DNA of 64,000 nucleotides from Magallana gigas (GCF_963853765.1 NC_088855.1:59706001-59770000), one strand, 5' to 3'; positions 14,468 to 49,858 are shown, counted from the first letter of the stretch. Notes: generated from the letters alone by a model not told the origin. A program made the numbers and translations.

Positions 14468-16219
14468 AATCTATATATTTTTTAATGAATGGAATGTCAA
14501 TCAATATAATCCTGTTTAAGGCCTATTAAGATATTTGGCTCTGATAAATCGTGTCACAATGGGTGAACCTCACAATGGACTACCTTACAATTATAACGAC
14601 AATGTTGTGTGTCTTTGGACAGGTACGGCATCATCTGGACAGATTTATATCAAATCATGGAACAGAACACACTGAATAAAACTAGAAAACATGTAAACGG
14701 GACATACATCAGTCCCAGGCTTTTTACACACCAACACACACACACACCTACCCACATATATAAACATTAAAGGACTGGATGTATACATATGTGAAGTGAT
14801 GGTGTAATATCAATTTTTTAATGAAAGGACACTTCAAGAAGTCAGATTCAAAAGTTGTAAGATCTGTCATCAACTGGATTAATTTAATATCACACAGTGT
14901 CTCTGTGGTCACTTTGAATTGATGAGGATTTTGGCAAGACTACATGTGATTGTCTACTTTTTGAGAGTTTGCTCCCTTGCATCTTAACAACTCTGTAGCA
15001 AATATAGCGAGACATTAAGGTGCCTCACTACACCTTGAAATAGTTTCTCAAATTGGCAGAAAATAACTTGATTATGATAGAAAGCATGATGGATATGAAG
15101 TATACATGTCAAATAGGTGGAAAAATGTTCAATTTTAGATAATAAATGATATTTTCAAAAATGTCATTCAGTAAACATGAACAAAAGCCCAAGGTGACCT
15201 GCAATCACAAGCATGATACTTTAACCACTGAGCTATGACGATACACATCTGAATTGGTTGATACAAACGGTTTTATTAACAAAACATTTAAATAGCCATC
15301 TTGTGACGTAGTGTCTTAAAAAGTATAAGTCTTGGTGTAGTGAAGTACCTTAAAGTGAAAGTGAACCAAAAAGAAATCATAATAAAAAAAGATGAATTGG
15401 ATCAAACTGATACAATAACTTGTTACTAACTAGATAAAACCAATCAATTAGAAAGGTGATTTCAACATTCATAAACAAGAAACTTAAAACAAGATCTACA
15501 ATCAAATATTTCCAATGCTAGTTTTTAAGAAATTCATTCTAGTACCGAGTGGAGCTATATACATAATATCACAGTCCACTTGGCATTGATTTATAACGCT
15601 TATTTACAGCTAAATCCTGGCTCAAATTCTACCTCAGTTTCTATAGCAAAAGCTCAATTTACTTTTTATCAGCTCTTGTCTGATTAATTTCTTTGCAGCA
15701 CCTAGCCTGATTTACTTTTTTAAGTATCTAGTTGAAGCATTCTTTTTGAGAACTTGCTATTTTAGAAGAAATAACACTAAATTCTGATGTTGATGATTTT
15801 TACAATGAGTATGAAAACTTGATTTAAAAAAACTTTCATTTTCCTAAGATTCATATAAAAAAATGAGAAATTAAAGTACAGTGTTTAAAAACTATATGGG
15901 CGGTAATACCCACAGACTGGATGGACATTGCAGACCATAGTGTTCACAAATATGATTTACAAGCATCTAAACACTCCTTGGTATGAAATTATCTTACAAG
16001 GCACAAATATACAATAAAATGAAATGATTCAAGTTTTGGCACATCTTTACACCGATCACAGAAATTGACATTGTCCATAAGGTTCTTAAGTCAGAAAAAA
16101 AAAATCACTATATTACCAAAAATCCAGTTGTCTGATTAGAAACACTCTGAGGTATGTTCCAAACAAACAAAGGGATCAGACTTTGACCTTGACCTTGGAT
16201 TTCACCTGACCTTCAGAGG

Positions 16220-19200
16220 TCACTCTCTCTTTGCCTCTTGATCCTCTGACTCTCCCTGGAGGTTCTCTGCCCCTGGGTTGTAGTAGGCGGGGCTGGATTC
16301 CTGAACAAACTCTTCCCTGGGGGTGGGGAGGGTGGGACTAGGGATGAAGTCCTCGTCTAGATCTTCAAGGTCAGCATTGGGGCGACTTCGGCGCCGGAGT
16401 TCCGTCATGGTGTGAATGGTCTGGTCCCGGCTATCCTGCTCCTCCTCCAGCCAGCTCTGTTCATACAGGGACATTCTAGTGATAATCTTATTTAAAATAA
16501 TTCATGAATATGCTAAAAATTTATTCTTTTTATAATTATCATTTAAGGCCACATCTTTGCTAGACAAGCAAGAAAATCCATGGTGTCTCTATTCACTCTA
16601 TATAATTTGCTATCGTAGATGTTAAGGCCGTTGAACAGCTGAGTGATGTCACATGGTTATATTACTTATATATTTAATTTGACAGCATTATTTTGAACTT
16701 ATTGGTGACACCTGCATGTACAATAGGGAGAAAATGATAAACATATGCATGTAACTGTACTGCGACACAAAATCTGTCAAAATACGTAAACTCCTAACCT
16801 TGACCTCGTCCCCGTACATCCGGAGGCTGAAATCCATCTTATTGCGGTACCTCTCGCCTCGGTACAAGTAAGGGGTCTGAAATAAGGACACACACAATCT
16901 ATAATAGAGCTCACTGAAAACATGTATTTATCAAACATTTCTACTGTAAAAGTAATCCGTCTTCATGCAAGATTCTAGGTCTGCAAGTACCTGTGTACCA
17001 TACAGAGGGCACTCGATGACTCAATGTTTTATTGTTTGATATATCGGGTATATACCTAGTTCCTTTCACCAGAATATAAATTATTACAATATTGTAAATG
17101 TTGTAAGTATTAATTCATGTACTAGTGTACAAAGTCATTTCTCACTTCTCTATTTCTGAATTGATCAGTCTAACATTAAGTAACTATAAAAAGACAACAA
17201 GCGATGAAAACAATCACAAATACACTTAACTTGTTTACCAATATTTAAGATACATCTTAATTACCTGTTAACGAGTTCTACCAGTACTTTTTACCTGTAG
17301 ATCGGTGGAGTCCTTCTGGAGAGCGATCAATCCACCGGTCCATTTATAGTCATCGTTCTCACACATGATCTTCTCCTCATCACTCAGGTAAACGTGTGCT
17401 GTCTGTTTAGCATGGTCTGAGACACAAATTCACAATTTCAGTGTTATCATATTTATTGTTATTATTTATTATTTATTGGCTGACCAAAAAAGCTTTCCAA
17501 GAAGGTAAGGAAAATTAAGGCAAAAACCTCAATTTTAAAGTATTTGGAATCATGAAAGATTTTTAAAATCATAAATTTTTGCCAAAAAAGTTGATAAGGA
17601 AAATTAGGCAAATGCCTAGGTTCTTAAATATCTGGAATCACTTATTTTGAACCATGAACGATTTTAAAATCAAAAAGTTTTGCCAGACTATCTGACTGAC
17701 ATAAGCCAAGGACTGAACTTCGTTATCCTACATGATTGTGATGTAACAAAACACAACACAGACATTTTTAAGTGTTGTCATTTTGTGACAAGAAGGTTGT
17801 CAATATAGGGCAAAATAGATTGATTAATTCACCATCAATGTCGTCCAGTTTGAGTTTCCTTCTGTACTGAATACGGAATAAAAACAGCTCCAGGATGAAC
17901 GCAACAACAATCGTCATGACAACCTACAAAAGATAAAGAGCTAGCTGGGATAACAATAACATTGTTATATTAAAAACTTAAAATAATTTAAACTGACAGT
18001 TGCTGCTCATATTTATCCAGGTGTATTGAGGATAAGATAAACTGTATATTCCTAATTGACCACGAGGAAGAAATCGCGAAAGGCACCCTTCGCGGATTTT
18101 TAAATCTTGCTTTTATTTTCTAAGAGTTAAAAACTATAAGAAATAAGGATAGAAATTCCGGGATTGCGATTTTATATTCTCGCGATTTGATCCGAAACCG
18201 CTGGATTGCGGAATTAAGTACTTGCGTAATAAAAGGAATTTACAGTAGGATTGCTACATGTAATATTAACAAGGATAATCTTCTTGTCCAGATGGTGATA
18301 GTAATAAAGTCTTGTCAACATCACACAATACAGGATGTCTTAGAAGAACATAATAATAGGTACATGTATCTAGTCCTAGTCTCTTACCATCATCACAATG
18401 TAAAACGTCATAAAGAAGACCCGCGATACTTCTCCTATATGATGTGCAAAGCCATCCTATAAATACCAGGAAAAAAGAACATCATGTTATATTGTCGAAA
18501 TGCATGTCACATTCATTTTTAATTTGCAAAAATAAAAAATATTTACATATGAATTGAAATTTCAAAATATAACTTACGAAAACAAAATTTTTGAACAAAT
18601 GTGCTTCATTTTTGCAAAATTTGTAATATACAAAAATACAGCACATACAGTTATTAACATGTCTATGTTTCCACGTACACAGTAAGTAACAAAATTCCAA
18701 CATTCCAAAACACTGAATAAAAAAGATGTGATTTTTTTCAGGTAAAGATCATTTGAAACATCCTGTAAATTTTAATGATTCTCTATATGATACTCTTATA
18801 TAGAGAACTATGAAGTGATATACCATGATAATGAAGTGATTACATACCATGATAAAGTGAAGTGACTATGTAACATGATGTAATGAAGTGACCACATACC
18901 ATGATGTAATGAAGTGACTACGTACCATGATATAATGAAGTGACTATATACCATGATATAATGAAGTGACTATATAATATACTGTAATGAAGTGACTATG
19001 TGCCATGATATAAGGAAGTGACTATATACCATACTGTAATATAGTGACTATGTGCCATGATATAAGGAAGTGACTATATACCATACTGTAATATAGTGAC
19101 TATGTGCCATGATATAAGGAAGTGACTATATACCATACTGTAATATAGTGACTATGTGCCATGATATAAGGAAGTGACTATATACCATACTGTAATGAAG

Positions 19201-22200
19201 TGACTATGTGCCATGTTATATTAAAGTGACTATATACCATACTGTAATATAGTGACTATGTGCCATGATATAAGGAAGTGACTATATACCATACTGTAAT
19301 ATAGTGACTATGTGCCATGATATAAGGAAGTGACTATGTGCCATGATATAAGGAAGTGACTATATACCATACTGTAATGAAGTGACTACGTACCATGATA
19401 TAATGAAGTGACTATATACCATACTGTAATGAAGTGACTACGTACCATGATATAATGAAGTGACTATATACCATACTGTAATGAAGTGACTACATACCAT
19501 GATGTAATGAAGTGACTACATACCATGATATATTGAAGTGACTATATACCATACTGTAATGAAGTGACTATGTACCATGATATAATGAAGTGACTATATA
19601 CCATACTGTAATGAAGTGACTATGTGCCATGATATAAGGAAGTGACTATATACCATACTGTAATATAGTGACTACGTACCATGATATAATGAAGTGACTA
19701 TATACCATACTATAATATAGTGACTATGTGCCATGATATAAGGAAGTGACTATATACCATACTGTAATGAAGTGACTATGTGCCATGATATAATGAAGTG
19801 ACTATATACCATACTGTAATATAGTGACTATGTGCCATGATATAAGGAAGTGACTATATACCATACTGTAATGAAGTGACTATGTGCCATGATATAATGA
19901 AGTGACTATATACCATACTGTAATATAGATATCATGTGCCATGATTTAAGGAAGTGACTACATACCTGTATAATGAAGTGATTACATAACATGATATAAT
20001 GAAGTGACTATGTACCATGATAATGAAGTGACTATATACCATACTGTAATGAAGTGACTATGTGCCATGATATAATGAAGGAACTATATACAGTCGGTTC
20101 AAGAACATCTTTTACAACATACACCATAGCATTGCATAGCATTGAAATCTCATACCATAGAAAACAATCTCATAGAATCGCATCCGGCATATCATACCAT
20201 AGCATAGCATACAATATTATTTTAACTGGGTTTTAAATGTTTTTATATGAAAAAAAATAAATGTTAACATTATAGATTTGTCATTAACTTTGGCTTCTAA
20301 TTATTTTACTTCGAAATATGTAGAACTCTTCTGTGTTTTTTTTCAAATCTCATAGCATACCATAGCATAGCATAGCATACCATATCATTAAGCCCTTCAT
20401 TTCAATTTCTCATAGCATAGCATACAATTCTCATAGCATAGCATACAAATCTCATAGCATATCATTAAAATCGCATACCATAGCATAGCATACAATTGTA
20501 AAAGATATGCATGAAATGACTGTACCATGATATAATGAAGTGACTACATACCATGATATAATGAAGTGACTACATACCATGATAATGAAGTGACTACGTA
20601 CCATGATATAATGAAGTGACTACATACCATGATAATGAAGCGACTATTTACAATGATGTAATGAAGCGACTACATACCTTGATAATGAAGTAACTATTCA
20701 CCCTGATGTAATAAAGTGACTACATACCATGATATAATGAAGTGATAACTTAACATGATATAATGAAGTGACTATGTACCATGCTGTCATGAAGTGACCA
20801 TGTACCATGCTAATGAACTGACTATGTATCATGATATAATGAAGTGACTACATACTATGATATAATGAAGTGATAACTAAAGATGATATAATGAAGGGAC
20901 TATGTACCATGATGTAATGTAGTTACTATGTACCATGATATAATGAAGTAACTACATACCATGATGTAATGAAGTTACTACATACCATGATGTAATGAAG
21001 TGACTACATACCATGATATAATGAAGTGACTATATACCATACTGTAATATAGTGACTATGTACCATGATATAATGAAGTGACTATATACCATGCTGTAAT
21101 GAAATGACTATGTGCCATGATATAATGAACTGACTACATACCATGATAATGAACCAGTTGTTAACCACGGTCAGCTCAAACAGCGTCACTGTCAAAATAA
21201 GCACAATCATTAACAGTGTTCAATAGAAACCTATTGATAAAACTATTTCACTTAAGGTATCCGATCCATAATAGCCTCAGATTCAATGAATCTGGCTGCA
21301 TAACAGATATGTATGGGCTTAACACTCTTGAACAAATTGTTCCTATAATTTAAGTATCAATATGTAAGTGTGGAATGTGTCCTAATTAATGACCTTTTCC
21401 TTTTTCTTAAGAGTTGTCCCCCTTTGCTTTATTCTATAAAAATTAATTCTAAAAAAATCTACACGGAATAAAATTTATTTTCAATAGTTTTTGTATTCCC
21501 ATTGATAAAATACATCTTTCCACCAAAACATTTTTTAATATTCCTAGTAATTACTTTTTTATCTTAAAAAATGTGCTTGTCTCCATAGACCTTAATGCAA
21601 ATCTTTATTAATTAATTACTGCTTAATTAATAATATTTTTGAAAATTTCTCTCGGTAAATCTTTTTCTACAGTAACTCTTAAATGCTTTAAATGAATATC
21701 AAAGTATTAAATACATGATGAATATTCAAGGTTGGAAAAATTTGGTCCTAATATGGATCGGATACCTTAAATCAAAGTTTTAGGCTTCTAAAAAATTTAC
21801 ATATCCCCCATAGTGAGCATCTTAAAAGTGACATGGACATGTTTTAAAATCAAATTTATATAATTCCATTTTGACTTATTACATTTCACTGATTTACATG
21901 TATTGCTAATGGATAGCCAAAACTTCAACGTCAGTTGTTGAGGTTGATTATTTTAAGGACTGGTCTATGAATACAGGGACTTTGATACTACCTACCCCCG
22001 GAGACCATGAAACCTACCCCCAGAGACCATGAAACCTACCCCCGGAGATCATGATGTTGCTGAAGTCGTTCAGATAGTAGTAGCCCTGTGTTCTGCTGTC
22101 ATTGGTGAAGCGGTAGAAGTCCTCTACGCTTGTGTTTCTACAAAACAAATTCAAAACAAACCTTAACAAACCATTGCTCGACCGATAGAAGTCTTCCACA

Positions 22201-25200
22201 TTTAAGTTTCTACAAATATTATTAAATAATGAAACTTCAACTGAATACCTATACATGTATTAGATAAAGGCCTATCAATGTACGACATCCATGCAAAATC
22301 TGTTGCAAGTCATACGTGAACTCCACGATCATTGACTATGTAACAATGTATAACAATCCCATAATACTTAAAATAAGTAGATGTTTTTCATACTAATTCA
22401 ATAAAATTCAATTTACAATTATGAACAATCACTAAAAGGGGCATTTTTGTCAGAGAAATTCCCTGAACTGAAAACTTGCTTACTACTTATTGCTCCAGTA
22501 TGGATGACTTACTTGCAGCAGTTCTTGAGATCTACATAAAGGAAGCACTCCATGCCGACAATGGCAAAGAAATAGTACACCAACATTATGACAACCACCA
22601 GGCTGAAACCAAAGGTCAAGGTCAAGTTAAAACTAACACACAAACAACTATACAAACCCATTTTATTCATGTTCTCTTCAGATTTCAGAAATCTTTTTAA
22701 GAAACTGTAGATTTATCAAGTACATTTTTATGTTTGTGTGGTTTTTACACTGATTTACATGGATATTGGTAACCAATAGCAACAGTGAGCTGTGAACAGT
22801 CGGTAACCTTACCTGATGAGTCTGGAGAAGAGAACGAACAATGTCCCCAACACGTCCCGGTAACTCCGCTTGACCTTGAACAGTCTGTGCATACAATGGA
22901 CAGAGAATTGGAAACCAGTGAGATTTAGTTACAGGAAAGAATGAATCAAAATTTCAAAAATTTGATGTCAGAGCAATACATGTACTTGTCAATAAATCTA
23001 TCTGACACATAGTATTTATTCATGAAACCATGTAACAAAGTTGATGCTATTCATCCAATTGACAATAACAATTTCTAATTGATAAATCCCTAATATCTTG
23101 ATGCAAACATGTGAGAGTGATATCAGTATATACTAGTATATTTTGATCCTCGAAGTTAAGAGATATCTGCAGCTGTTATATCTTGATATTAGTAATCTTT
23201 AAAATGAAAACAGTAATGACAAAATTTTGTGCTGGTAATAAAGTAATTTATCTGCATTAATTACCGCAGTAGTCTGAATGGGCGGAGTACAGTGATGTAG
23301 AAGAATGAGTCGTTGAAGTACTCGCCCAGTAATCCTACCACGCTGGTCATTGTCACCAGGAAGTCAAACCTACAACAGACCGACAACGTTACTATTAATA
23401 ACACCATCAGTACTCGCCCAGTAATCCTACCACGCTGGTCACCGTCACCAGGAAGTCAAACCTACAACAGACCGACAGCTTTACTTTTAATAATGGACGA
23501 TCACTGGACAACGTTACTATTAATAATGGACGATCACTGGACAACGTTACTATTAATAATGGACGATCACTGGACAACGTTACTATTAATAATGGACGAT
23601 CACTGGACAACGTTACTATTAATCATGGAGGATCACTGGTCAACGTTACTATTAATCATGGAGGATCACTGGTCAACGTTACTATTAATAATGGACGATC
23701 ACTGGACAACGTTACTATTAATCATGGAGGATCACTGGACAACGTTACTATTAATCATGGACGATCACTGGTCAACGTTACTATTAATCATGGACGATCA
23801 CTGGTCAACGTTACTATTAATAACACCATTACCATCAACAATGGACGTTCAAACAGATATATAGCAGTAGAATCCTACTTCAATGTGAGGAATTAATATC
23901 TGTGTCAGATCAAGTGAAGCCATTGCAGATATCAAGATCTTGCTTTTAATTTCCTGACAGTGAAAGCTATGTGAAATTATTATAACATTTTGTGTTTGCA
24001 ATTCTATATTCTTATTGTTTATGTAGTAGATTGACCCTGAATTAAGTGCTCACAGAAGCTACTGCTGTAACACATGTAAACCCTTTATCAGAATACTTCA
24101 AAACGATACTCACAAATCCCAACCGGTTGTAAAATATTCTACTGGACCTTTGCCAAGAATTTTAATGGAAGCTTCTAAAGTGTATACTGAAAGAATCGTG
24201 GATAAGGTATGTTAGATACATCCAAAAAACAAATTACATTCATGTTTTATTAAATATGACTGATCTGTCAACATTTATATTTTCTTTGTATATAATCTAC
24301 ATGAAAATATCATAGGAAAAACAAAGAGACTTACTGCATATAAAAATAATGGAAGCCCAGGTAATTGTAAAGTTGTAGTGCTTAACATCAATATTCTCCC
24401 CTTAAAAACAAAAACAGATCATTTTTACACATTGCACTGCACTGTCCAATGTAACTATATGATCACCCAAGTCTTTCCTACCTATTCTTACACTGCCTAC
24501 TCTGTCATTAGAGCGTTTACTATCCATTGCTTAACTCTCAGATCTTTCTTATTTTATACAGTGAGCTCGCTAATGTTAAAAAATCTTCTCTCACAGCATT
24601 CTGCTAACTTTTTCTTACCCTAACCGCTACTCTTTGTGACCTTTTCTTTCCTTGACCTCTACTTTAAATAACCTTTCCTCTCCTTGACTTCGCTCTCTAT
24701 GACACATCTTTCCATGACCTCTACTTGACACTACCATTTCTGTCCTTGACCTCTACATTCCCTGATCTTTTTATATCCTTGACATCTACTCTCCATGACA
24801 TTTTTTGTCCTTGACCTTTATTTTCCTTGACCTTTACATTCTTCAACCTATTTAAACTTCCTCTAACCTTCACTTACGTGAGAGAGAAATAGTCTCCTCT
24901 AAGATCCAAGCAAAATTGACAGCAATTACCAAGTCTGGAAAAATCAGTGAGTTCATGTACATGTATTTGTCAAAAAGATCTGTATCTAACATCCTCAAAT
25001 TATCCAGTGTACAAAAAATAGTAAAAACTTTATCTTCATATGAACAATTACGTTGACAGTTAATAGGCATACACTGGCAACAGACATATCTTTGATTGGT
25101 TTTAGATGATCAGTATTGTTTTTATGATTTTTTTTAGGGTTTGGTTAAATTTAAAATTTGAAATTCATGTACAGGTTATAAGCTGCAAAACGTAAACTCT

Positions 25201-28200
25201 ATCAATAAGTGTCCAGGAAGCATTCCTGGATCTATGCTGGTCTCAAGAAGACCAAGGCATTAGGCATTTTTTCCAACAGAACTTCAGTCCTGGTTATGCT
25301 TCAGAATCATTTTATCTCTCATTAGACTTTTAGTCCAAGTTTATATAAATTATAATCTTATCAAACAATACTTACATATGAATCCTTCAAAACCTCGCCA
25401 GTTGACAAATTCATTCAGTTCTACAGATGAAAAATAAAATCCAGAAGTTAAAAAGATTTTAATCAATGTCCATCGGGTAAGAGTACATGTCATTGAAACA
25501 CTTTCATCATTTTTGGCCAAAACTTTTCAAATTGAAGTTTAAAATAGAATTTAACTCATTTTTCAATTTCATAAAATGAAAAAATGAAAAATGAGTTATT
25601 CATCTTTGCAAAACAGAAATAAAATTTATCTGCATGTGGCAGCATTTGGCCTAATGTGACAAAGCCTGAAAACTAACAATTCATTTTATTGATCTATCTA
25701 TAACTTGTATTGATCTGAACTGCTTTATCGCTTTTCATTGTTCTTATAGAAACTTTCAAAGGTTGATCCCATTTCATATATCAAAAGTTTGCATAATATA
25801 CATTATATATTACTGAAAATGCCCCTCTCACCCCTTCTCTCGATAATGAACCATATACTTCAAAGAATACCAATAAGAGAGCCTAAAATTGACTATAAAG
25901 TTAACAAGGACAAGTTTAAGTGATGAATGCTTAACTTTTACTATGAAAAGAGCTACTGTATGCAGGGATATATATTGATAGGGTCATTGGCCACAAATCT
26001 ATGTATCCTTGGAACTGTGATTTTCACTTTATTCACGAAAATTGATAATGAAACCACAGTAGGTGTTATGTCATCACTTACTGGTACTCTATAACCATTA
26101 AACTATTTCAATGACAAACTAGCATATCACTGACATACCCTTTTTTTGTTTATAATTTTCTAATCACCCAGGGCATTTCATGAGGTTAAATATACTTTAA
26201 CAATTACTGTCAACTAACTTAAGAAAACACTTACTTTTGAAAATGAAGTTGAATGGATATCTGAAATTTGATGACCAAATCTTGAACTCCTCCTGTTTTG
26301 GCTAAAATATGATTACATATAAATAGAATCAAGATTTCATTGAGTTTATTTCAGTGCATAGAAATAACACACACATAATGTTTGATTAGCAGATATCTGA
26401 ATGACAGTCAAATCAATTCATTAATGCCAATAAAGCATGGCAGAATTACTCCTGGGAGCCTCAATACCCTAATCTCTACATAAATTCCTGTAAGTATATA
26501 AAACCAATAAACTGTTGGATCCTGAGGGTGTTAGAGATTGGAGACTGACCTGCCACTGAAGGTCAAGGACACTGTACACGCCGTAGAACTCCTCCATACT
26601 GAGACGACCCGACCGCGACTTGTTCAGCGTCTTAAAGATCAGGTAGGCATCTAACCTCTCTATACATAAAACAAACACCACTTTATCATCATGCTATTAG
26701 AAAAAAGTAACTGGAAAAAAAATTGTTCATTCATAATTTCATTCATTGTACATTCATCAATTGTATTCATAATTTTATAGATACTAAGGAGTCTGGGCCA
26801 GTGAGACCTACTTTTTTTGGGTCGGAGGTACCGCAGCATTCCGATAAAGTTCCTGATATTGACTGTGTTAGAATCCTACAAGATAAAAGCATTCAGTCAG
26901 CTTGGTCCTTCAGACACTTGTGTAGAAAAATATTCATATGAGACTAATAATTTTTATGTTCAAGATATAACTGAAATATGAATGAAATATTGTTGTTTCC
27001 TATATAAACCCTAGGAATAGTATCCACTATAATGATAGAAATTTAGCGTTCACAATTTTATGTTCTCACGATTTGATACAATACAGCCGAATAGCAGAAC
27101 TAAGTAATTGGGTAAAATAAGGAATCTACAGTTAATATTAATGACTGTTTTGTATAAAGACTTCTAAGGATCTGTTAGCTATATGTATATATTTTGTAAC
27201 AAAATTATGCAGGCATTCTAAAGGTGCATACCTGTTTTGTAACAAGGAGCTTGAAGGCATGTTGGCAGCCAATCCTCTTGTGAAAATATAACCTCTTTAA
27301 TTTTCTCTTCTCCAGATTTGAAAACGTATCGTACACAACAGCAAGTAGCTACAACAAGGCGATGAATTACTGTGGAGTTTCCTCTTAGGAAAATCATTAA
27401 CATAAAATGGTTTAGCTTTGTCAAATTATGACTTGCATTAAAAGCTGCAATCTGCTTGACATCACTTTTTAAAACTTGTAGAATTTAATGTCATTTATTT
27501 TGGACATTAAATTGTCCTTTTTTTTCACATAATGATAGAAAATAAAACATTAAAAAATTTCTATAAAATACTTAATGAGGCCGGGTCTAATTTGTTCTGA
27601 CCTTAATTTTTGATTGATTTTTTTTTACATGAAAAACTAATGATATAATTATAATTTTAAGATAACAAAAAAAATAAGACATTTACCACACCGTTTGTTT
27701 AAGGGGTCATCTCAAAGTTTGTTAATTTTTAACATAGGACCCATTGGGATTTTGCTTGAAATGTATCAATTTTGCACATTTTTTACATTTTTTTTTAAAC
27801 TTTTGCCCTAAGGATTTCTTTTTCTGTTCTATAATTAAAGTTATTGCTAAAACGCATCAAATGGTCAAATAAAAAAAACCTTTCACCTCCTGGTTTTTTC
27901 CAGGGGTCTTATCAAAGTTGTTTTTTGTATGCCCAATTTCCCAGATTTGTCAGATTATGGCTATATTTTATTTGACAAAGGCGGAAATAGTGATCTTTAT
28001 AGTATTATTAAAACATTCAGACATATTTAAGTAATAAATAAATATATGACATCACATAAGAAGGGTCATTAATATAAAATATATGGTTACTGTCTTGAAA
28101 TATATGAATTAAGCTATATTTAGGCGGGTTAAGAAAATGTGACGGAGGGCTCTTCACGTTTTCGACCCGAGCCCAAATATAGCTTATACATCAAGACATT

Positions 28201-31200
28201 TATGTTTATTTCACAATATAATATCAATTTTACGCATCAAATAAGCTATTTTCAACACATTTTGCTGAATATCTGCAGTTGAAACTATCAAGCCATGGCG
28301 TCAACAAAGCATATAGATGACGCCACAATACAAATGAAACGCTGCGCGAAAGCGTACGTACTCGTTCTGTACTCGGCCTCATTAATATACAAAAAGGAAT
28401 ACTTCAATTTAAGAGTGGGGTAAAATTGTGATACCAGACTGAGACATCATAATAATGGTGAGCAACTGTACAGATGGTGGGGGGAAATGGAGAAGGTCCA
28501 TTAGATGTTAGATAAATGCTCTGCATTATTCTAATTGCATTAAAAGCATCAAAATATTTTTAAGGAAAGTGTAAGCATATTTGAAAATAGATATTCGGTG
28601 ACATAACTTCCTCTCAGGAAATAGACTCACCAGATTCATAAGGAAATACAGAACTAAGGCCAGATACACAATGAAAAAGGCAGCGTTGAACCGCGAGCTG
28701 GCGTAGGCTGGCATCATCACGTCCGGGAAACTGAAGGCAAGGACAGTCAAGGTTAAAGCACTGGTTATAGCATTGATTTTGAAAAAAAAATTAATGAGCT
28801 AATTAATGCAAAAGCTTGAGATGCTTTGTTTTAAAAGGAGGGGGGGGGGTCAGGACTATCAAACAGAAATCACACAATTTTCTTACTTTAGTACACATAA
28901 TGTGGTTTTTTTTACAAAATCAATTGTTACTGGAAGAGAATTACAAAAATTCATTGTCAAAATGATTTTATTATAAGTCTTTGAATTCTCCAATTTACAT
29001 TCAAAAGTAACTTAATGATTTAATTTCACATTTATTAACAGCATTTTATATATTGAAACACACTTAAAAACAAAGTGCCAGAAATGGGTGATTTCGCTTC
29101 ATTATAAGAGTAATTTGTAATATGTGTCAAGTTTACAACATGTTAATAAGTCACAGGGAATGAAAATCACTTCACTGTAGGTGTCAAATCATTATAAACG
29201 TGTTCACTATAACTGTGTTTCACTGTATATCTAAATATTTACCGTAAATAAAATATCCTCTTTTATAAAAATTTGTGTTCAATTATGCCCAATATGTTTG
29301 CATGTGTCTAACAGCTTCGACATGTTTGTAAATTAGTATAGGGAGTCAACAGTAGCATTGGGCGGCCTCGTTAGTGGTATATGCGGGGTTACAACGTATG
29401 AGGGTGCTTACTTTGCAGTGGTCAATAAAACAAAGAGGCTGACAAAGCTGTCCTGTAGAGTGCTGAAATACTGCAAAAGAAAGTCAGAGTCAGTCCCTAC
29501 AGGTCCAGAGAAGGGGCCCCAAAAGCTACCATCATCACACATGGAATAATACAGCACATAGGAGCCACAATAGCTAGCACATTTTTACACAGAATTGTAT
29601 CGTAAATACAGTTAAACTCCATTATATTTAAGTCCTAGGGACTAATGGATTTACTTCATTATATCAATAAATTGTAATATCTGTATAACCAATTCGTAAT
29701 AATAACTATAGCGAAATCACTATTTTCTTTCACTAGACTACAATTTTTGCTAATTGAGGCTTAAAATGATAATACATTCTTTTGATACCTTTAATAATCG
29801 GATTGTGAATTAAAGAATTTATGTGAAAATAAATTCATTTAAACTGTTATGTTCAATGATGGTGCAAACTTTTTAAACTGTAGAGAAATTTGTTGTAAAA
29901 GTGTTAAAATTCATCATTATTCACCTCTACGGGACTCAAAATTAGTTTGCTATAACCGTAATTCTTTATATCTGACTTCATTATAACCATAAAATTTTGC
30001 AAAGATTTGTTAAGAATTTTAACAGAAACTCAAAAAAACTTCATTATAATTTCGAGATTTTGCTTTATCCGTTTTCGTACCTAACGAGTTTTCTGCACAA
30101 GCCTAAATACCTTCAACATTTATACATGTACATAGAATTTAACAATACATAGGGCCCCAATACACCCCTGCGAATGTGTTCGGAATGTTTTCTTTATCGT
30201 TGCTAAGTATGTAATAAATCCAGAGGTGCTCGAATGAAAGTTCACGAGACTTCACCGAGATTTCTTCAGTTCCTGTGAAATTTCGAGCGGAAGTATAAGT
30301 GTTCGGATAAAATTCTCAAAATACGTAAGTACTGATCGATTTTCATATCATATTTTACTTTAATTTATGTTAAAACATCAACATCTTTTAAGATGTATGT
30401 CTTATTTCACCATCTAGCGGTTTTTTAAAATTAAACGATGATATTCAGAATAGAGTTATCGTTCGTGTTCGCCCACGTGTAGAGTGGTTGATAATATAAA
30501 CATTGGGTTGCTTAATAAAATCATAGCCATGTTTGATGCTTGTGGTGTGCAATACCATGTTTTTAAAAAAAATAATGGGTGAATGTTTTGCATAAAAACT
30601 TAGTATATCGAGCCATTTTCAAGGAACATTCTGCATAAAATAGTACAGTCTGTTTCACTATTGATGTTATTACTAGGTCAGGCGCGGATCGAAAATTAAT
30701 TCTTAGGGGGAGATCTCTACTACGAATGTTAGTTGTCGCAACAGCAGAAAAATAACTATTTTTTGTATTGTCACATTTATTTCTAGAACACATTTTATCC
30801 ACCAATTAATGAAGATAAAGTTTAAAATCAATAAACCTCTAGAATTTATATTTGACTACAAGTACCTAGATTCTCTAAAATAGACTATAAACACGAGGCA
30901 CGATTTTTACTGCGAAACTGAAAGTGTCAAATAAAACCACGTGGTCTAAAATTTAAATGACAATAACATTCGCAGGGGTGAATAGCTAGTATGTTCTGCC
31001 AAATGAATGAATTCATTGTTTAGATAAGCATTATTTTACCATCAAGTATAGGAGTCAGCATTTTCTGTCAAAGTTTCTTACCGTGTCATTGGCAACTTGC
31101 GAGAAGAGATAAAATCCTGAAAATAAAAATACACCAAGTTGTGTATACTTTGCTTAATCTGTTAGTTACAAGAGTGAATATGGGACAGGGTTTTTGTCTG

Positions 31201-34200
31201 TTCCAAAACTACAAGTGTGCATGCAGTCTGACATAAGAAATTTTAAGGTAAATCAAATTTAGAACAAATCTAGAAGTGAAGGGATTAAATATTGTGCTCA
31301 AATCTTACCGAGTATGGAGAAAATTAAGATGAAGAACATGAGTAGGAAGATGAGTTCTAGGATTGGAGGCAGGGACATGAGGATCTGACGACTGATTCTG
31401 TAATCAAGATTAACAAGATTAATGTGATCATCCAATATACTTATATCAAGTCCAACTCTGACGACTGATTCTGTAATCAAGATTAACAAGATTATTGTGA
31501 TAATCCAATACACTGATATCAAGTCCAACTCTGACGACTGATTCTGTAATCAAGATTATTGTGATAATCCAATACACTGATATCTAGTCCAACAACAGCA
31601 TTTAATGTCCATAATCCAATCAAGAAAATCCAGTTCAGTGTAACCATTGTTTTGCACAATACTAGTGAATAAATCAATGCAAATTCATTTTACTTTTCAA
31701 AAACATTATAAAACTCTACTTGACTTCAGATCTGATTCTAATCTGACTCCCCTGATATCTAAAACAATGTCCGAGTCTGACCTTCTGACCCTTAGACACC
31801 AATACATGTATCAATATATTAGTCTGACCCCTTTTATATCGATACCTGAGCCTGACATTTGACCAATACATGTACAGTAAAACTCGTTTAGTACGAACAC
31901 GGATATAGCGAATTCTCGGATATAGCGAAATGCTTTTGAATCTCCGGTAAAATTCTTAACTTATCTTAGCAAAATGTACGATTATAACGAATTCGTATAT
32001 TACGAATTTACGGTTATAGCAACTCATTTTGAGTCCCGTAGAAGTGAATAATAAGGAAATTTCACACTTTTATAACGAATTTCTTTACAGTTAAAAAAGC
32101 TGGCACTACCACTTAACATAATAGTTTGAATGAATTTATTTTTCATAACTGTTTTTCAATTCATAATCAGATTATCAAAGGTATCAAAGTAATGTATTTT
32201 TATTTTAAGCCTCAATTAACAAAAATTATAATCTTGTGAAAGAAAACATGTATATAGTGAATTCGCTATAGTTATTGTTACGAATTCGTTATACGGATAT
32301 AGCGAATTACGGATATAACGAAGTAAATCCATTGGTCCCTAGGACTTCGCAATAACCGAGTTTTACAGTATCAATATATTAGTCTCACCCCTTTTATATC
32401 GATACCAGAGCCTGACTTTTGACCCCTCTGAAATCAATAACAATATCTGAGTCTGACCTTCTGACCCCTATGATATACAATATCTGAGTCCAACCTTCTG
32501 ACCCCTACCATCTCAACAACTATATAGAGTCTGGCCTTCTGACCCCTACCATATCAACAACAATATAGAGTCTGACCTTTTGACCCCTCTGATATCAATA
32601 ACAATATCTTAGTCTGACCTTCTGACCCCTCCGATACCTTTTACCAATCTAATTTGATAGTGTTATCAATATCTGAGTCTGACCATGTGATATCAATATC
32701 AGTATCTTAACCAGTCTTTTTGACCCTCTAATAACAATATCTGAGTCTGACCTTCTAACCCCTACGATATCAACAACCATATCGAATCTGACCTTAGCCC
32801 CTCTGATATCAATAGCAATATCTAAGTCTGACCTTCTGACCCCTACGATATCAACAACAATATAGAGTCTGACCCTCTGACCCCTCTGATATCAATAACA
32901 ATATCGAGTCTGACCTTCTAACCCCTACGATATCAACAACAATATCGAGTATGACCTTCTAACCCCTCTGATATCAATAACAATATCGAGTCTGACCTTC
33001 TGACCCCTCTGATATCAATGACAATAACTGGGTAACGACATAAATGACATACTAACCATGCATTTCATAGGTATATACAATAGAAATATGTGTTAAAACT
33101 TATGTGTTAAAACTTATGTGTAATATTTCAGCGCAAAGAAGCATTTTAACTACAGTTGCTGATTTTGAATTTTGTAATTTAAAATTGATCTGACACAGAA
33201 AATGGAAGGTTGTGTTCAGCTAAAAAAAAAACAAAAAGAGTTTCTGCTACATTAACCTTGCTTTCGAAATCTGTAAATGATGGCATGAAAGTTGTAAGTG
33301 ACTTAGAAGACTTTTGTGTATTAAAAAGCAATTTATACATGACTTTAAATGTTTAGTCAGATCAATTTGGGCACTCGATTACTTTGATTTACTATATGAA
33401 TTCATTTTCCCAGATATGTTGATAGGTACAAAATATCGTTTTCTTTTTGTTGGTTTTGATTCGGCTGGCCCCGATGAAGACCTTTTCTTATTGGAAGCCA
33501 TCACACTTAATGGTTTAAACCTTCGGTTTGTCAAAGCAACTCACGATAATAATTAACACTTGCTGTGTCTGTTATATAGCCATATTCAGCATTGTTTACG
33601 TAGCTCGTAGATCCAAGCTCAGCTTGGGTTCATAACTGGAAGTCAAACGCGCAACATAATTTACGAACCAAATCCGGAAATCGGGAGATTTTTGGATTGT
33701 TCAACAAAAATCGGGTGAAAAGCATGACCCGCCGGGTCATAAAAAATAATCGGGTGAAGAGAAAAAAACGGGTGTGACCCGACGCAAGCGGGTCAGTTGG
33801 CAAGTATGGATATCAATAATAATATCTTAGTCTGACCTTCTGACCCCTCTGATATCAATAATAATATCTTAGTCTGACCTTCTGACCCCTCTGAAGTAGT
33901 GTGTGTCAATCAGGAAGAGTGGGCGGAGCGCCCTGGTGACCCGGAAGTGATTAGTCTGTCGAATCAGCACCACAACAGACTCTATGAACATAATGGCCAG
34001 TGTGACAGACTGAAAAAAGGTGGAATACAAACATTAGTTCCCAAAAGTAGATTTTTAATTGACTGTCCGGTTATTAAGGCAAATTCATTTTAAAGAAAAA
34101 ATCAAGGTTCTGCTTTTAATATATAGCATTTAGAAATATATTAAATCTTATTTTCTTCTGACAAAATTGTTAATTAAAGGACTATGTGCGGTATGGTCAA

Positions 34201-37200
34201 ATATCTGCCCCCGATTTCAACCAATTTCTAAATAGTATCGTATAAAAAAAATCTTCACAAATCATTGTATAGAGGATGCCTATCACTTTAATCTTGATTT
34301 TAGTCATCATTGCTCATTCGCTGTTTATCTATGATGTCACCTAAATGACATAATTCCCGCAAATTTGCAAACAAATGAAAATATTCTCATTTTTGCTCTA
34401 TATTTTGCATTCGGAAGTATAGAGCGGAGGTCTGCTCAAGTGCGATTTTAACATACGTTTTTCTTCAGATAGTTATACACATTATGCTAAAAAATGGTAC
34501 TTGAGCAAGCCTGCGCTCGATGTTTCCCAGTCGAAAAACCATCGAAAAACACCCATATTTTGCTACAAAACATCAATTTATCGAAATAATGCAATCTTTC
34601 TGACGTCCTTTCTACATTATGACGTCACTGTGGTGTTAAGCTTTTACACCCTTATTTCCAATATGATTTTAACTATCTTTCACCTTAATTTTAAAGCTTT
34701 TTCTAAAACTTTGATTTTGGGGGCAAAAAATGCATAAAACCGCACATAGTCCTTTTACACGAATTGTACAGATCTTTAAAGAAACATTAGGTTGAATTTC
34801 ACCTTGATGGAAGTCCGCTTGTGTTTGATAAAAGTCTTCCAACCTAGCCATCTCATCTTGATGGCTAACTGTAGGGCAAGAATTAGCTGGCCCAGAATCT
34901 CCAAAGAACCATGGACCTACAACATAGATTATACATGTCTGAGGAACTCCCCAAAGAGCCAAGGACCTACAACATAGGTTAGACATGTCTGAGGAACTCC
35001 CCAAAGAGCCAAGGACCTACAACATAGGTTAGACATGTCTGAGGAACTCCCCAAAGAACCAAGGACCTACAACATAGGTTAGACATGTCTGAAGAACTCC
35101 CAAAAGAGCTAAGGACCTACAACATAGGTTAGACATGTCTGAGGAACTCCCCAAAGAACCATGGACCTACAGCATAGGTTAGACATGTCTGAGGAACTCC
35201 CCAAAGAACCATGGACCTACAACATAGTTTAGACATGTCTGAGGAACTCCCCAAAGAGCCATGAACCTACAACATAGGTTAGACATGTCTGAGGAACTCC
35301 CCAAAGAACCATGGACCTACAACATAGTTTAGACATGTCTGAGGAACTCCCCAAAGAACCATGGACCTACAACATAGGTTAGACATGTCTGAGGAACTCC
35401 CCAAAGAACCATGGACCTACAGCATAGGTTAGACATGTCTGAGGAACTCCCCAAAGAACCATGGACCTACAACATAGTTTAGACATGTCTGAGGAACTCC
35501 CCAAAGAGCCAAGGACCTACAACATAGGTTAGACATGTCTGAGGAACTCCCCAAAGAGCCATGAACCTACAACATAGGTTAGACATGTCTGAGGAACTCC
35601 CCAAAGAGCCAAGGACCTACAGCATAGGTTAGACATGTCTGAGGAACTCCCCAAAGAGCCAAGGACCTACAACATAGGTTAGACATGTCTGAGGAACTCC
35701 CCAAAGAGCCAAAGACCTAGAACATATTCATCTTGTTGAATCTTTTTCACAACTCCATATGTGCAAAAAAATACTTGACGTATGCGAACCAACAAAATAT
35801 AAAATTAATTCTATCAGTTAAGGAAATTGTATTTAATGTTAAAAAACTTAAATCAGTTAGGAATATTAAAAGTGGTTTTTTTCCTAAAAAGCTATATGAT
35901 AGAGATGATATTCAAACTGTAAACTGAGATGGGTACTTAGCATACATGCTGTATGTACTCTAATGCTTGCAAGGCACTAAGGCATATACAGAACAGGTGA
36001 TATAGTATGAATATCTTTAAGGGATGGTACTCCAACAAGTAACCAACTGGAAGTACAGTGAAAGCTTATGATATCCCAACAGGTATTGTAAGGTATCAAT
36101 AATTGTATGAAATGTTCACTCCCACAGGAAGTGCAAGATATTAACACCTGTATGAATGCTTACTCCCACATGGGTTCTTACCCAGACAGGTAGTATAAGA
36201 TATCAACACCTGGATGGATGTTTACCTTACAGGTAAGGTAAGGTAGGTAATGAATCCTTACCCCTACAGGTAGTGTAAGGAAGGGCACGGCCGGTCGTTC
36301 ACACGCAGCCAGCAGCAGGAGACCAAGGGCTGCCACCAGGTCCAGAACCTGGAACCACTGATGATGGGCTATCTGATAGGCGGGCAGGGCGTTACAGTTC
36401 CGGGGGTGGGTGTAGAACTTGTCGTTGTTCTCGCCTTCCTGTAGAAATATGGCCGCCTCCTGGTAGTTCAGCTCCCATAACTTCCTGTTGTCTCTGCGAC
36501 TCATTTGGGCAGAGATCGGGATATCGTAGCCCATGTTACCCGTGTCATTGACAATTTCATACTCGGACTCCGCTAACAAAAGAAATTCATTCTGAGTATT
36601 AACATGTCTGAATAGAATAAGAAATCATTACAAAGTAACTATATGTCTTGATGACATCTTTGTAACTGCCTAGCTTACAATAACTTACTAACTACTTACA
36701 TGAACTACATGTTTTTATTAAATTCTATGCTGCAGACTCCAAATGGAAAAAAATATCAAAAATAATTTTAAAAATTTGTAATATATAGAACCACTTTAAC
36801 AAGACTTTGGATTTTCGGAGGAAAGTAATATCTATTTCTTGTATCAAAACAAGTTAAATATGATGCTAGTTTCGCTGGTTTCAAGTGAACTATGCATAGA
36901 TTGCATAGTCTTAGCTCAAATGCCAGAGAAAGCTTTTTGATTTCAAAAAGACATGGCTGAGTAGCAAGCAATGACCTAGACAGGCCATAGTCAAAATGCG
37001 TTTTGACAACAACTCAAAGTCCATTTAGCTCTTGTTCAAATGCTTCAATCATTGCAGTACTGTAAATTCCTAATTAAACGCGAGGAATTTATATCTGCGT
37101 AAAATCGCAAGAAGCATGCCTAGCGGATTTTAAAACCTCCCTATTATTTTCTGGGAGTTGGGAACTATAAGAAATATTCATTTGATAAATGTTCTGCGTT

Positions 37201-40942: not shown

Positions 40943-41295
40943 ACTTGTTTATCCATTCGGAAATTCTCCAGTCGTGGGTTCCGAAGGGAAAGTAGTCCTA
41001 TTGGTATATTCATGCGCTACTTGATAAATAACTTTGTTGAATTATGTGAACATCTGTTTATATTGTTCCAAATTTGAAATTAACTCTCTCAACATGATAT
41101 TTTGATATATAATTTAAAAGAATACTTATAATCATGAATTGATACATAAGAATATATATAAGATACATGGAACTATCTGTTGCTAGTGTAAGACATGTCA
41201 ACAAATTAAATGTGATAAGGTTAAATCAAGATGGCAGAGTCCGTTTAGAGTAACTGACACAACATTGTATGTAATTTTTAAAGAAAGGAAAGACA
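40943..41295. promoter_or_regulatory. Putative bidirectional promoter/5' UTR interval between TPCN1 and IQCD
   Basis: Only 353 bp separate the divergent start codons. The interval contains an imperfect RFX X-box-like GTTGCTAGTGTAAG at 41179-41192 (weak match). Confidence 0.55.
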
Positions 41296-49519: not shown

Positions 49520-49858
49520 TGGTCAATATGAGAATTCAAGTGGAGATAAATATCTGATAAGTGGAGATAAATATCTGACAAGTCGACATAATTATCTGAC
49601 AAGGTAAAGTGGACATAATTATCTGACAAGGTGAAGTGGACATAATTATCTGACAAGTGGAGATAAATATCTGACAAGTCGACATAATTATCTGACAAGG
49701 TGAAGAGGACATAATTATCTGACATGGTGAAGTGGACATATTTATCTGACAAGGTGAAGTGGACATAATTATCTGACAAGTGAAGATAAATATCTGACAA
49801 GTCGACATAATTATCTGACAAGTCGACATAATTATCTGACAAGTCGACATAATTATCC
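49520..49858. repeat. Tandem repeat built on GACATAATTATCTGACAAGT modules, probably inside an interspersed element (~49090-49962)
   Basis: Visible ~21-33-bp modules that generate the spurious SDNYVDL / IIMSTCQ ORFs. Confidence 0.85.

What the first reader, a model, noticed from the sequence alone, without database searches (positions are those of the whole stretch)
18810..36290. TPCN1 splice junctions repeatedly act as seeds of junction-specific tandem repeats, filling introns with decoy splice sites
Seen: tandem repeats of unrelated sequence sit with their terminal unit exactly on a functional exon/intron boundary. Donors: exon 21 (26 bp, ~70 units), exon 20 (22 bp x3), exon 4 (~42 bp, >15 units) and exon 2 (degenerate). 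Acceptors: exon 3 (50 bp x~16), exon 5 (73 bp x3), exon 17 (92-bp offset x2) and exon 20 (72-bp offset, old). Each unit contains 12-53 nt of exon plus the GT or AG and adjacent intron, and always expands into the intron, leaving the protein intact. That is 7-8 of 50 junctions in one gene. I saw no such repeats at the 16 junctions of the other four genes. Inference: this is either (a) a mutational mechanism tied to splice junctions, such as co-transcriptional R-loops or pausing, or (b) selection, because junction-spanning duplications regenerate the splice site and survive. Either would be a route to intron lengthening, splice-site sliding and new exons. I do not know of this pattern being described for bivalve genomes.
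Basis: partly seen in the sequence, partly recalled or inferred. Interest (0 to 1): 0.85.

Follow-up and report, generated by a model that had tools for sequence, protein, structure and literature searches.

The report
Splice-junction minisatellites in oyster TPCN1
Eight of the 50 exon-intron junctions of an oyster TPCN1 gene have been copied in tandem into the adjoining intron. This is real, but it is most likely a neutral by-product of very frequent small duplications in short-intron oyster genes, it occurs across the genome, and single cases are long known from human genes such as F7.

Summary
Confirmed. TPCN1 lies on the minus strand and has 26 coding exons, mapped with a cDNA contig. Tandem copies of its own junction sit at 8 of 50 junctions. 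Six are strong (exon 3, 5, 17 acceptors; exon 4, 20, 21 donors) and two are decayed (exon 2 donor, exon 20 acceptor). Units hold 12-53 nt of exon plus an intact splice site. Stable mRNA uses only the exon-adjacent site, and the nearest decoy would give an early stop. The arrays tested are locus-specific and recur, with other copy numbers, in an independent M. angulata assembly.

The pattern is not peculiar to TPCN1. TPCN1 of C. virginica, Saccostrea and Ostrea each carries 2-7 independent junction arrays. In this genome, 7 of 147 junctions sampled in myosin genes have them, and so does ERCC6L. This scan also noted the same thing in other windows of this genome.

A uniform-duplication model expects 11-21 junction-spanning arrays among 66; 22 are seen. 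Breakpoints are not anchored at the junction. A junction-linked bias of up to twofold is not excluded. Donor-side cases are known in human F7, IFI6 and CBS. I found no description of acceptor-side arrays or of this prevalence.

The parts
15324..40968 (-). TPCN1 (two-pore channel 1) gene. It has 26 coding exons and a CDS of 2508 nt. The first coding exon is 40942-40879 and the last is 16456-16223, followed by the 3' UTR.
   Evidence: Spliced mapping of P0167. cDNA contig L001 aligns to all 26 exons at 96-100% identity. Orthologues share the same 26-exon structure.
36074..36285 (-). Exon 2 donor (last exon base 36262), followed by three or four decayed copies, about 45-50 bp apart, of the exon end plus GTAAG.
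   Evidence: TRF finds 45 bp x 2.2 at 36074-36170. The junction probe scores 20/28 here and 21/28 in M. angulata. Local alignment matches 20 of 23 positions, score 31 against a shuffle maximum of 23.
34901..35726 (-). Exon 3 acceptor array: 50 bp x 16.5, 95% matches. Each unit is about 31 nt of intron ending in AG plus the first 19 nt of exon 3. The functional acceptor is the last one (first exon base 34916).
   Evidence: (15 copies at 21/28 or better). Ten upstream AG sites score within 1 bit of the real site. The sequence occurs only at this locus in the genome.
33809..33894 (-). Exon 4 donor (last exon base 33879) with the first two units of the 42-bp array, which are 100% identical. Each unit is the last 15 nt of exon 4 plus 27 nt of intron.
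   Evidence: (28/28).
32407..33026 (-). Continuation of the exon 4 donor array: 41-42 bp x 15, 71-88% matches.
   Evidence: M. angulata has 7.8 uninterrupted units at the same junction.
33027..33808 (-). A transposon-like insertion of about 780 bp that splits the exon 4 donor array.
   Evidence: At least 40 near-full-length copies at 80-86% identity lie on all chromosomes of the same genome. It is absent from the M. angulata array.
31384..31593 (-). Exon 5 acceptor array: 73 bp x 3. Each unit is 60 nt of intron ending in AG plus the first 13 nt of exon 5. The functional acceptor is the last one (first exon base 31397).
   Evidence: (28/28).
23317..23493 (-). Exon 17 acceptor: a 92-bp tandem duplication made of the first 53 nt of exon 17 plus 39 nt of intron. 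The first exon base is 23369.
   Evidence: 28/28. The cDNA is 100% identical to the upstream copy over the 53 nt and differs from the exon copy. M. angulata has 9 junction copies here.
23474..23823 (-). A 33-bp x 10.6 intronic array just upstream of the exon 17 acceptor. It does not contain the AG. Its last unit is part of the 92-bp duplication.
22172..22216 (-). A decayed copy of the exon 20 acceptor (AG plus 38 nt of exon 20), 72 bp upstream of the real one (first exon base 22137).
   Evidence: 34 of 45 positions identical, score 35 against a shuffle maximum of 27. It lies in a stretch absent from M. angulata intron 19.
21990..22054 (-). Exon 20 donor array: 22 bp x 3. Each unit is the last 13 nt of exon 20 plus 9 nt of intron. 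The last exon base is 22040.
   Evidence: (26/28). M. angulata has one extra, decayed unit.
20523..21148 (-). Exon 21 donor array, proximal block: 26 bp x 24. Each unit is the last 12 nt or so of exon 21 plus GTATGT and about 8 further nt. The last exon base is 21142.
   Evidence: Eighteen GT sites in the intron score within 1 bit of the real donor.
18829..20087 (-). Exon 21 donor array, distal block: 52-bp higher-order units x 24, which is about 48 units of 26 bp.
   Evidence: The sequence occurs only at this locus in the genome.

Best explanation
These are junction-spanning minisatellites. Small tandem duplications of 20-100 bp arise very often in oyster genes. When the duplicated piece lies inside an exon it breaks the reading frame and is lost. 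When it lies in an intron, or straddles a junction, it is tolerated. A straddling duplication recreates an intact splice site next to the exon and pushes the spare copies into the intron.

The ancestral introns of this gene are short, about 130-350 nt for most of them. A quarter to two fifths of all tolerated duplications of this size must therefore straddle a junction. Unequal exchange or replication slippage then changes the copy number, which lengthens the intron and fills it with intact spare splice sites.

The spliceosome uses the exon-adjacent site, that is the first donor or the last acceptor. Use of the nearest spare site would give a premature stop, so such transcripts would not yield protein and would probably be degraded.

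Shown here: the anatomy, the locus-specific origin of the two arrays tested, use of the authentic sites in stable mRNA, copy-number change between assemblies, recurrence in other oysters and other genes, and the fit to a uniform-duplication model. Inferred: the mutational process, neutrality, and the fate of mis-spliced RNA.
For: 1. Anatomy. Each unit holds exon sequence plus a splice site, and the terminal unit is the real junction.
2. The two arrays tested, exon 3 acceptor and exon 21 donor, match nothing outside this locus in the 564-Mb genome. A transposon inserted into another array, and a 166-bp satellite elsewhere in the window, have many copies.
3. Assemblies differ in copy number. At the exon 17 acceptor the window has 1 spare copy and M. 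angulata has 9. The exon 21 donor has about 72 units against 17. The two Saccostrea haplotigs have 25.2 against 21.2 and 5.9 against 7.9 units.
4. TPCN1 of C. virginica, S. echinata and O. edulis carries 2, 7 and 7 junction arrays. Where the same junction is hit in two lineages, unit length and exon extent differ. At the exon 20 donor the units are 22, about 42 and about 69 bp. These are independent events.
5. In the same genome, 7 of 147 junctions inferred in myosin genes carry such arrays (95% interval 1.9-9.6%). All were checked by eye and 6 of the 7 are also called by TRF across the junction. Four are in one gene. TPCN1 at 6/50 is not significantly different (Fisher p = 0.10). The ERCC6L array was verified as well.
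6. Null model. 22 of 66 array families span a junction. The expectation is 10.9 with present-day collapsed intron lengths and 21.5 with the shortest orthologous intron lengths. In fully defined myosin introns (median 247 nt), 1 of 6 arrays spans a junction against 1.2 expected.
7. The exon share of the unit is broad, from 0.06 to 0.82 with mean 0.43, and fits a uniform spread (KS p = 0.57). Donors and acceptors are hit equally, 10 against 12.
8. The cDNA contig L001 and several independent full-length transcript-derived proteins are colinear with the authentic junctions. For the six strong arrays, the nearest spare site gives a stop within 3-69 codons.
9. Precedent. Human F7, IFI6 (6-16), CBS, LMNB2 and PDGF have minisatellites whose first unit spans an exon-intron boundary. 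In F7 only the most upstream donor is used.
Against: With present-day intron lengths the excess is twofold and significant (p = 6e-5). For the window alone it remains nominally significant even under the generous null (6 of 13 against 2.9 expected, p = 0.04).

The same junctions are hit in different lineages somewhat more often than random: 7 pair coincidences against 3.5 expected, P = 0.044. Arrays also cluster in some genes. TPCN1 shows them in four lineages (22/200 against 7/147 in myosins, p = 0.049), and one myosin gene has four.

The null model assumes a uniform duplication rate, treats all TRF arrays as local duplications, and uses proxies for ancestral intron length.
Confidence: 0.65

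Rival explanations
1. A mutational bias is tied to junctions or to particular genes. Tandem duplications would start preferentially near exon-intron boundaries, for example through co-transcriptional R-loops or polymerase pausing, nucleosome or methylation boundaries at exons, or microhomology supplied by splice-site-like motifs. Alternatively some genes, such as TPCN1, would be minisatellite-prone.
For: There is a twofold excess over the uniform model when present-day intron lengths are used (p = 6e-5). For the window alone, 6 of 13 arrays span a junction against 1.5-2.9 expected. The same junctions recur across lineages (7 against 3.5 coincidences, P = 0.044), and the exon 20 donor is hit independently in three genera. 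TPCN1 carries many arrays in four lineages, and one myosin gene has four arrays within 2 kb. Several further arrays end within 0-25 nt of a junction without crossing it.
Against: The excess vanishes when the short orthologous intron lengths are used (21.5 expected, 22 seen). Breakpoints are spread over the whole unit and are not anchored at the splice site. Donors and acceptors are hit equally. TPCN1 does not differ significantly from myosin genes of the same genome (p = 0.10). The p values near 0.04 are uncorrected and post hoc.
Confidence: 0.2
2. Selection favours the arrays. Reiterated splice sites would act as splicing enhancers or U1/U2AF landing pads, buffer the authentic site against mutation, or lengthen introns to advantage.
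For: Many spare sites are as strong as the real one: 10, 10, 6, 3, 3 and 18 in the six array-bearing introns. Arrays are present at the same junctions in the window and in M. angulata. In F7 a spare donor is used when the authentic one is mutated.
Against: No junction array is conserved between genera. Orthologous introns without arrays are spliced normally, and exon lengths are unchanged. Older units decay freely, with 71-80% matches in the distal exon 4 block and the proximal exon 21 block. Copy number differs freely between assemblies. The observed frequency needs no selection.
Confidence: 0.08
3. The pattern is an artefact or a coincidence: mis-assembled repeats, or ordinary intronic satellites that happen to abut exons.
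For: Long tandem arrays are hard to assemble, and I could not lay reads on them.
Against: The same arrays sit at the same junctions in an independent M. angulata assembly, and in two Saccostrea haplotigs for that species' own arrays. The junction probes match nowhere else in the window at more than 20/28. Several DNA runs from different studies hold about half or more of the sampled words of the stretch. The two arrays tested are unique to the locus.
Confidence: 0.03

Closest known systems
Human F7 intron 7 minisatellite (37 bp, 5-9 copies), whose first unit spans the exon 7/IVS7 boundary (Borensztajn et al. 2006, PMC1557585)
   Same: The first unit of a tandem array is the real exon-intron junction, and identical spare donors follow in the intron. 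Only the most upstream donor is used. Copy number varies.
   Different: F7 has one array in the gene, on the donor side only, with 4 nt of exon per unit. Here eight junctions of one gene are affected, half of them acceptors, with 12-53 nt of exon per unit and up to about 72 units.
Human IFI6 (6-16), CBS intron 13, LMNB2 and PDGF junction minisatellites (listed in PMC1557585; for IFI6 see Turri et al. 1995, as cited in PMC4526556)
   Same: These are minisatellites that repeat a splice donor because the first monomer spans the boundary.
   Different: In IFI6 and CBS the first two spare donors are used as well and give isoforms. In TPCN1 the nearest spare site at each strong array gives a premature stop, and no such transcript was seen among the assembled ones.
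Intron gain or intron sliding by tandem genomic duplication (Hellsten et al. 2011, PMC3265369; Drosophila cases, PMC2891723)
   Same: A tandem duplication that includes splice-site sequence is tolerated because splicing removes the extra copy.
   Different: In those cases the duplication lies in an exon or shifts a boundary and creates a new intron or a new position. Here no intron is gained and no boundary has moved: exons 2-25 have the same length in five oyster species.
[quoted passage not shown]
   Same: Duplicated acceptors, as well as donors, compete for one partner site, and only one copy is used.
   Different: Those are two-copy constructs. The oyster arrays are natural, have up to 16-25 acceptor copies, and the copy used in stable mRNA is the one next to the exon.

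Membership tests
Junction-spanning minisatellite (F7 / IFI6 type) | Head-to-tail array of units of about 10-100 bp | tested here: met
   TRF finds units of 22, 26, 42, 50, 73 and 92 bp with 1.9 to about 72 copies.
Junction-spanning minisatellite (F7 / IFI6 type) | The terminal unit contains a functional exon-intron boundary, so the splice-site sequence is repeated in the intron | tested here: met
   Exon map from protein and cDNA. 28-nt junction probes match at 26-28/28 in the adjoining intron at six junctions, and two decayed copies are significant against shuffles.
Junction-spanning minisatellite (F7 / IFI6 type) | The authentic, exon-adjacent site is the one used, and spare sites are silent or minor | tested here: inconclusive
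   The cDNA contig L001 and several full-length transcript-derived proteins use only the authentic sites.
Junction-spanning minisatellite (F7 / IFI6 type) | Copy number varies between alleles (VNTR) | tested here: inconclusive
   Copy numbers differ between the window and the closely related M. angulata assembly, and between two Saccostrea haplotigs. Variation within the window's own species was not tested.
Intron gain or splice-site sliding by tandem duplication | A new intron, or a shifted exon boundary, relative to orthologues | tested here: not met
   All five species have 26 exons. Exons 2-25 have identical lengths in all six loci.
Dispersed satellite or transposon-borne tandem repeat | Copies of the unit occur elsewhere in the genome | tested here: not met
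   The 50-bp and 26-bp arrays match only their own locus. The tool skips very common words, so this is not absolute. True dispersed repeats of the same window were found by the same search.
Tandem exon duplication (mutually exclusive exons) | A whole exon with both splice sites is duplicated and the reading frame is kept | tested here: not met
   Units carry only part of an exon (12-53 nt) and one splice site. Use of the nearest copy gives a stop within 3-69 codons.

The most novel reading that the evidence does not exclude
Junction-spanning duplications arise or persist about twice as often as a uniform process allows. They would recur at particular junctions, such as the exon 20 donor in three genera, and cluster in particular genes, such as TPCN1 in every oyster examined and one myosin gene. 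That would point to a transcription-, splicing- or chromatin-coupled mutational process. On this reading about one junction in twenty in oyster genes sits beside a ladder of intact spare splice sites, acceptor ladders included. No acceptor ladder turned up in my literature searches.
Probability: 0.2. Interest if true: 0.75.

Novelty: new variant of a known kind. Interest (0 to 1): 0.5.

Why it matters
Donor-side junction minisatellites have been a classical but rare model for how the spliceosome chooses among identical sites; F7 is the main example. If the sampled rate holds, oyster genomes offer very many natural cases: about 5% of junctions in myosin genes and 11% in TPCN1 across four lineages. 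These include acceptor ladders of up to 16-25 units and genes with several ladders.

That makes three questions testable at scale:
- Is the first donor and the last acceptor always chosen?
- How much mis-splicing and decay does a ladder cost?
- How far does minisatellite growth drive intron length in compact invertebrate genes? Here arrays make up 15-36% of intron length.

For annotation, such ladders are a source of wrong splice-site calls. For this particular gene the arrays look harmless.

Tried and rejected
- **Read-level RNA evidence.** No junction read counts exist. Only local scripts read the window file, and database protein ids were used for later searches.
- **Neighbour-gene control.** DRC10 has only 4 coding exons, so 6 junctions, and is uninformative.
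- **Ion_trans (PF00520) hits.** In the own genome these were mostly intronless channel genes, so they were not used.
- **A larger genome sample.** A second gene family could not be fetched.
- **The M. gigas protein P0325.** It is 'not on record' for loci. M. angulata was used as the close relative.
- **Turri et al. 1995 (PMC306954).** The paper is not held. IFI6 is cited through PMC4526556 and PMC1557585.
- **Rejected: transposon or satellite origin of the arrays**.
- **Rejected: tandem exon duplication**.
- **Rejected: a link between the shorter isoforms and spare sites.** The 802-aa and 783-aa isoforms of the protein cluster are an N-terminal truncation and a skip of exons 7-8.
- **Rejected: a shared ancient origin for arrays at the same junction in different genera.** Their units differ.


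Full report
**The gene and its exons.** The stretch lies in a minus-strand gene for two-pore channel 1. A search with the translated second exon found TPC1 proteins. A second search returned oyster TPC1 proteins, among them P0167, a transcript-derived protein of 836 residues. P0167 matches the window at 95-100% in most exons. With it I placed 26 coding exons and their GT/AG boundaries. An RNA-derived Logan contig that encodes P0167 (L001) aligns to all 26 exons with the same ends. The coding sequence is intact at 2508 nt.

The window is G000:C3:59706001-59770000. The M. gigas protein is 'not on record'.

**The observation.** I tested all 50 junctions with 28-nt probes, 14 nt on each side.

| Junction | Unit | Copies | Exon nt per unit | Probe copies in adjoining intron (>=21/28) |
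|---|---|---|---|---|
| Exon 3 acceptor | 50 bp | 16.5 | 19 | 15 |
| Exon 4 donor | 42 bp | about 17, split by an insertion | 15 | 10 |
| Exon 5 acceptor | 73 bp | 3 | 13 | 2 |
| Exon 17 acceptor | 92 bp | 1.9 | 53 | 1 |
| Exon 20 donor | 22 bp | 3 | 13 | 2 |
| Exon 21 donor | 26 bp | about 72 | 12 | 7 (ungapped) |

- All six junctions in the table have copies at 26-28/28.
- No probe matched anywhere else in the window above 20/28.
- The exon 2 donor and the exon 20 acceptor have decayed copies that still beat every one of 500 shuffles.
- Many spare sites are as strong as the real one. Counting sites within 1 bit of it, the six array-bearing introns hold 10, 10, 6, 3, 3 and 18.
- Use of the nearest spare site at any of the six strong arrays would give a stop within 3-69 codons.

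**Are the arrays real and local?**
- The 50-bp and 26-bp arrays match only their own locus in the 564-Mb genome.
- The same search finds dozens of copies of the 780-bp element inserted in the 42-bp array, and thousands of candidates for a 166-bp satellite elsewhere in the window.
- An independent assembly of M. angulata (L002) has arrays at six of the eight junctions (all but the two at exon 20), with other copy numbers. It has 9 junction copies at the exon 17 acceptor against 1 here, and 17 units at the exon 21 donor against about 72.
- Assembly artefact is therefore unlikely.
- Several DNA runs from different studies hold about half or more of the sampled words of the stretch.

**Other oysters.** I fetched the orthologous loci of C. 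virginica, Saccostrea echinata (two haplotigs) and Ostrea edulis. All have 26 exons. Exons 2-25 have identical lengths; only the first and last coding exons differ.

Each has its own junction-spanning arrays:
- C. virginica has 2.
- S. echinata has 7.
- O. edulis has 7, including an exon 18 acceptor ladder of 16 units.

Where two lineages share a junction, the units differ in length and in how much exon they hold. The shared junctions are the exon 5, 7, 17, 20 and 24 junctions. At the exon 20 donor, for example, the units are 22, about 42 and about 69 bp. These are separate events. The two Saccostrea haplotigs differ in copy number.

Tandem arrays make up 15-36% of TPCN1 intron length. They explain why intron 2 is 1345 nt here and 186-219 nt in C. 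virginica and Saccostrea.

**Other genes of the same genome.** Notes of this scan report the same kind of array in other windows of this genome: OvoA, a receptor gene, OSTF1, ERCC6L and three 'window-wide' notes. I treated these as leads and tested the point myself.
- Pfam Myosin_head hits in the own genome gave about 145 kb of myosin-gene sequence.
- I inferred junctions from the hits and a splice-site matrix.
- Seven of 147 junctions (4.8%, 95% interval 1.9-9.6%) have a junction copy at 21/28 or better.
- All seven look like true junction-spanning repeats by eye, and TRF calls an array across the junction at six of them. Units are 20-96 bp, with 7-16 nt of exon per unit in the six TRF-defined cases. 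Four lie in one myosin gene on contig C1.
- TPCN1 at 6/50 under the same criterion does not differ significantly (Fisher p = 0.10).
- I also fetched the ERCC6L place. It holds a 48-bp unit (28 nt of exon plus a GTTAGT donor) in about 17 copies, and the next exon follows downstream.
- The pattern is therefore genome-wide, not a property of TPCN1.

**Is it more than chance?** Array ends coinciding with junctions would be wildly improbable if arrays were dropped at random. That is the wrong null. The right question is how often an initial duplication of length u, tolerated only if it does not lie inside an exon, straddles a junction. For an intron of length I the chance is about 2(u-1) / (2(u-1) + I - u).

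Introns of this gene that carry no arrays are mostly 130-350 nt, so the chance is high. I summed this over the 66 array families of TPCN1 in four lineages.

| Data set | Junction-spanning arrays seen | Expected, present-day collapsed introns | Expected, shortest orthologous introns |
|---|---|---|---|
| Four lineages | 22 of 66 | 10.9 (p = 6e-5) | 21.5 (p = 0.49) |
| Window alone | 6 of 13 | 1.5 | 2.9 (p = 0.04) |

The truth lies between the two columns. Three further results bear on this:
- In the fully defined myosin introns, 1 of 6 arrays spans a junction against 1.2 expected.
- The exon share of the unit runs from 0.06 to 0.82 and fits a uniform spread.
- Donors and acceptors are hit 10 and 12 times.

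A process that cut at the splice site would not give this picture. What remains in favour of a bias is an excess of at most twofold. Added to that is a marginal recurrence of the same junctions across lineages (7 coincidences against 3.5 expected, P = 0.044), and clustering in some genes.

**How it works.** Shown:
- Stable mRNA uses the first donor and the last acceptor.
- Spare sites are intact.
- Using the nearest one would truncate the protein.
- Arrays change length.

Inferred: arrays are born by small tandem duplication and grow by slippage or unequal exchange, they are nearly neutral, and mis-spliced RNA is degraded.

For donors the choice of the first site agrees with the scanning model established on F7. 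For acceptor ladders I found no natural precedent in the papers searched. Which branch point and which AG are tried first is open.

The first 53 nt of exon 17 in the cDNA equal the upstream spare copy rather than the exon copy of this haplotype. M. angulata has the same bases in its exon. The difference is therefore a substitution in this haplotype's exon, and the spare copy keeps the older state.

**What is known.**
- Minisatellites whose first monomer spans an exon-intron boundary are described for human F7, IFI6 (6-16), CBS, LMNB2 and PDGF.
- Tandem duplication as a source of new introns is described too.
- Searches for oyster or Crassostrea together with minisatellite, intron and splice terms found no paper on this pattern.
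- The donor arrays here are new members of a known kind.
- Three features appear to be a new variant of that kind: the acceptor ladders, several ladders in one gene, and the prevalence and recurrence across oyster genera.

**Limits.**
- The genome-wide sample is one gene family and 147 inferred junctions.
- The null model uses proxies for ancestral intron length.

Noticed in passing
window 33027-33808: A 780-bp element is inserted in the 42-bp exon 4 donor array. The same genome holds at least 40 near-full-length copies at 80-86% identity on all chromosomes, so it is a non-autonomous transposon. M. angulata lacks it at this place.
   Followed up: partly
window 53752-55289, flanked by 52747-53240 and 55596-56136: A 166-bp satellite (9.2 copies) lies between two 35-bp arrays. 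The 166-bp unit is a genome-wide satellite, with thousands of candidate matches at up to 95% identity. From memory it resembles the known 166-bp oyster satellite carried by Helitron-like elements. I did not test that.
   Followed up: partly
G000:C1:75375600-75378100 (tile starting 75374619; loci L060, L065): One myosin gene has four junction-spanning arrays within about 2 kb: acceptor 96 bp x 5, donor 53 bp x 3.6, acceptor 38 bp x 3.5 and acceptor 43 bp x 4.6. This is the same clustering as in TPCN1.
   Followed up: partly
window 23369-23317 and 23461-23409: Exon 17 of this haplotype differs by two adjacent bases, which changes a valine codon to a methionine codon, from the cDNA, from M. angulata and from its own upstream spare copy. 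The spare copy preserves the older state of the exon.
   Followed up: partly
window 31900-32340: A stretch of about 440 bp in intron 4 has inverted ends and is flanked by near-identical copies of about 50 bp. It looks like a miniature transposon insertion into the tail of the 42-bp array region.
   Followed up: no
L005 (O. edulis) 10655-10886, 13529-13616; L003 (C. virginica) 11819-12037: Several intronic arrays start or end within 0-5 nt of a junction without including exon sequence. Examples are the exon 3 donor in O. edulis and the exon 17 acceptor in C. virginica. These are not counted as junction-spanning in my tests.
   Followed up: no
window 49537-49857: A 21/27-bp array downstream of DRC10 has units containing a donor-like AAG|GTGAAGT. 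No exon was identified next to it.
   Followed up: no
window 37889-37916: A run of 28 G in intron 1 of TPCN1.
   Followed up: no
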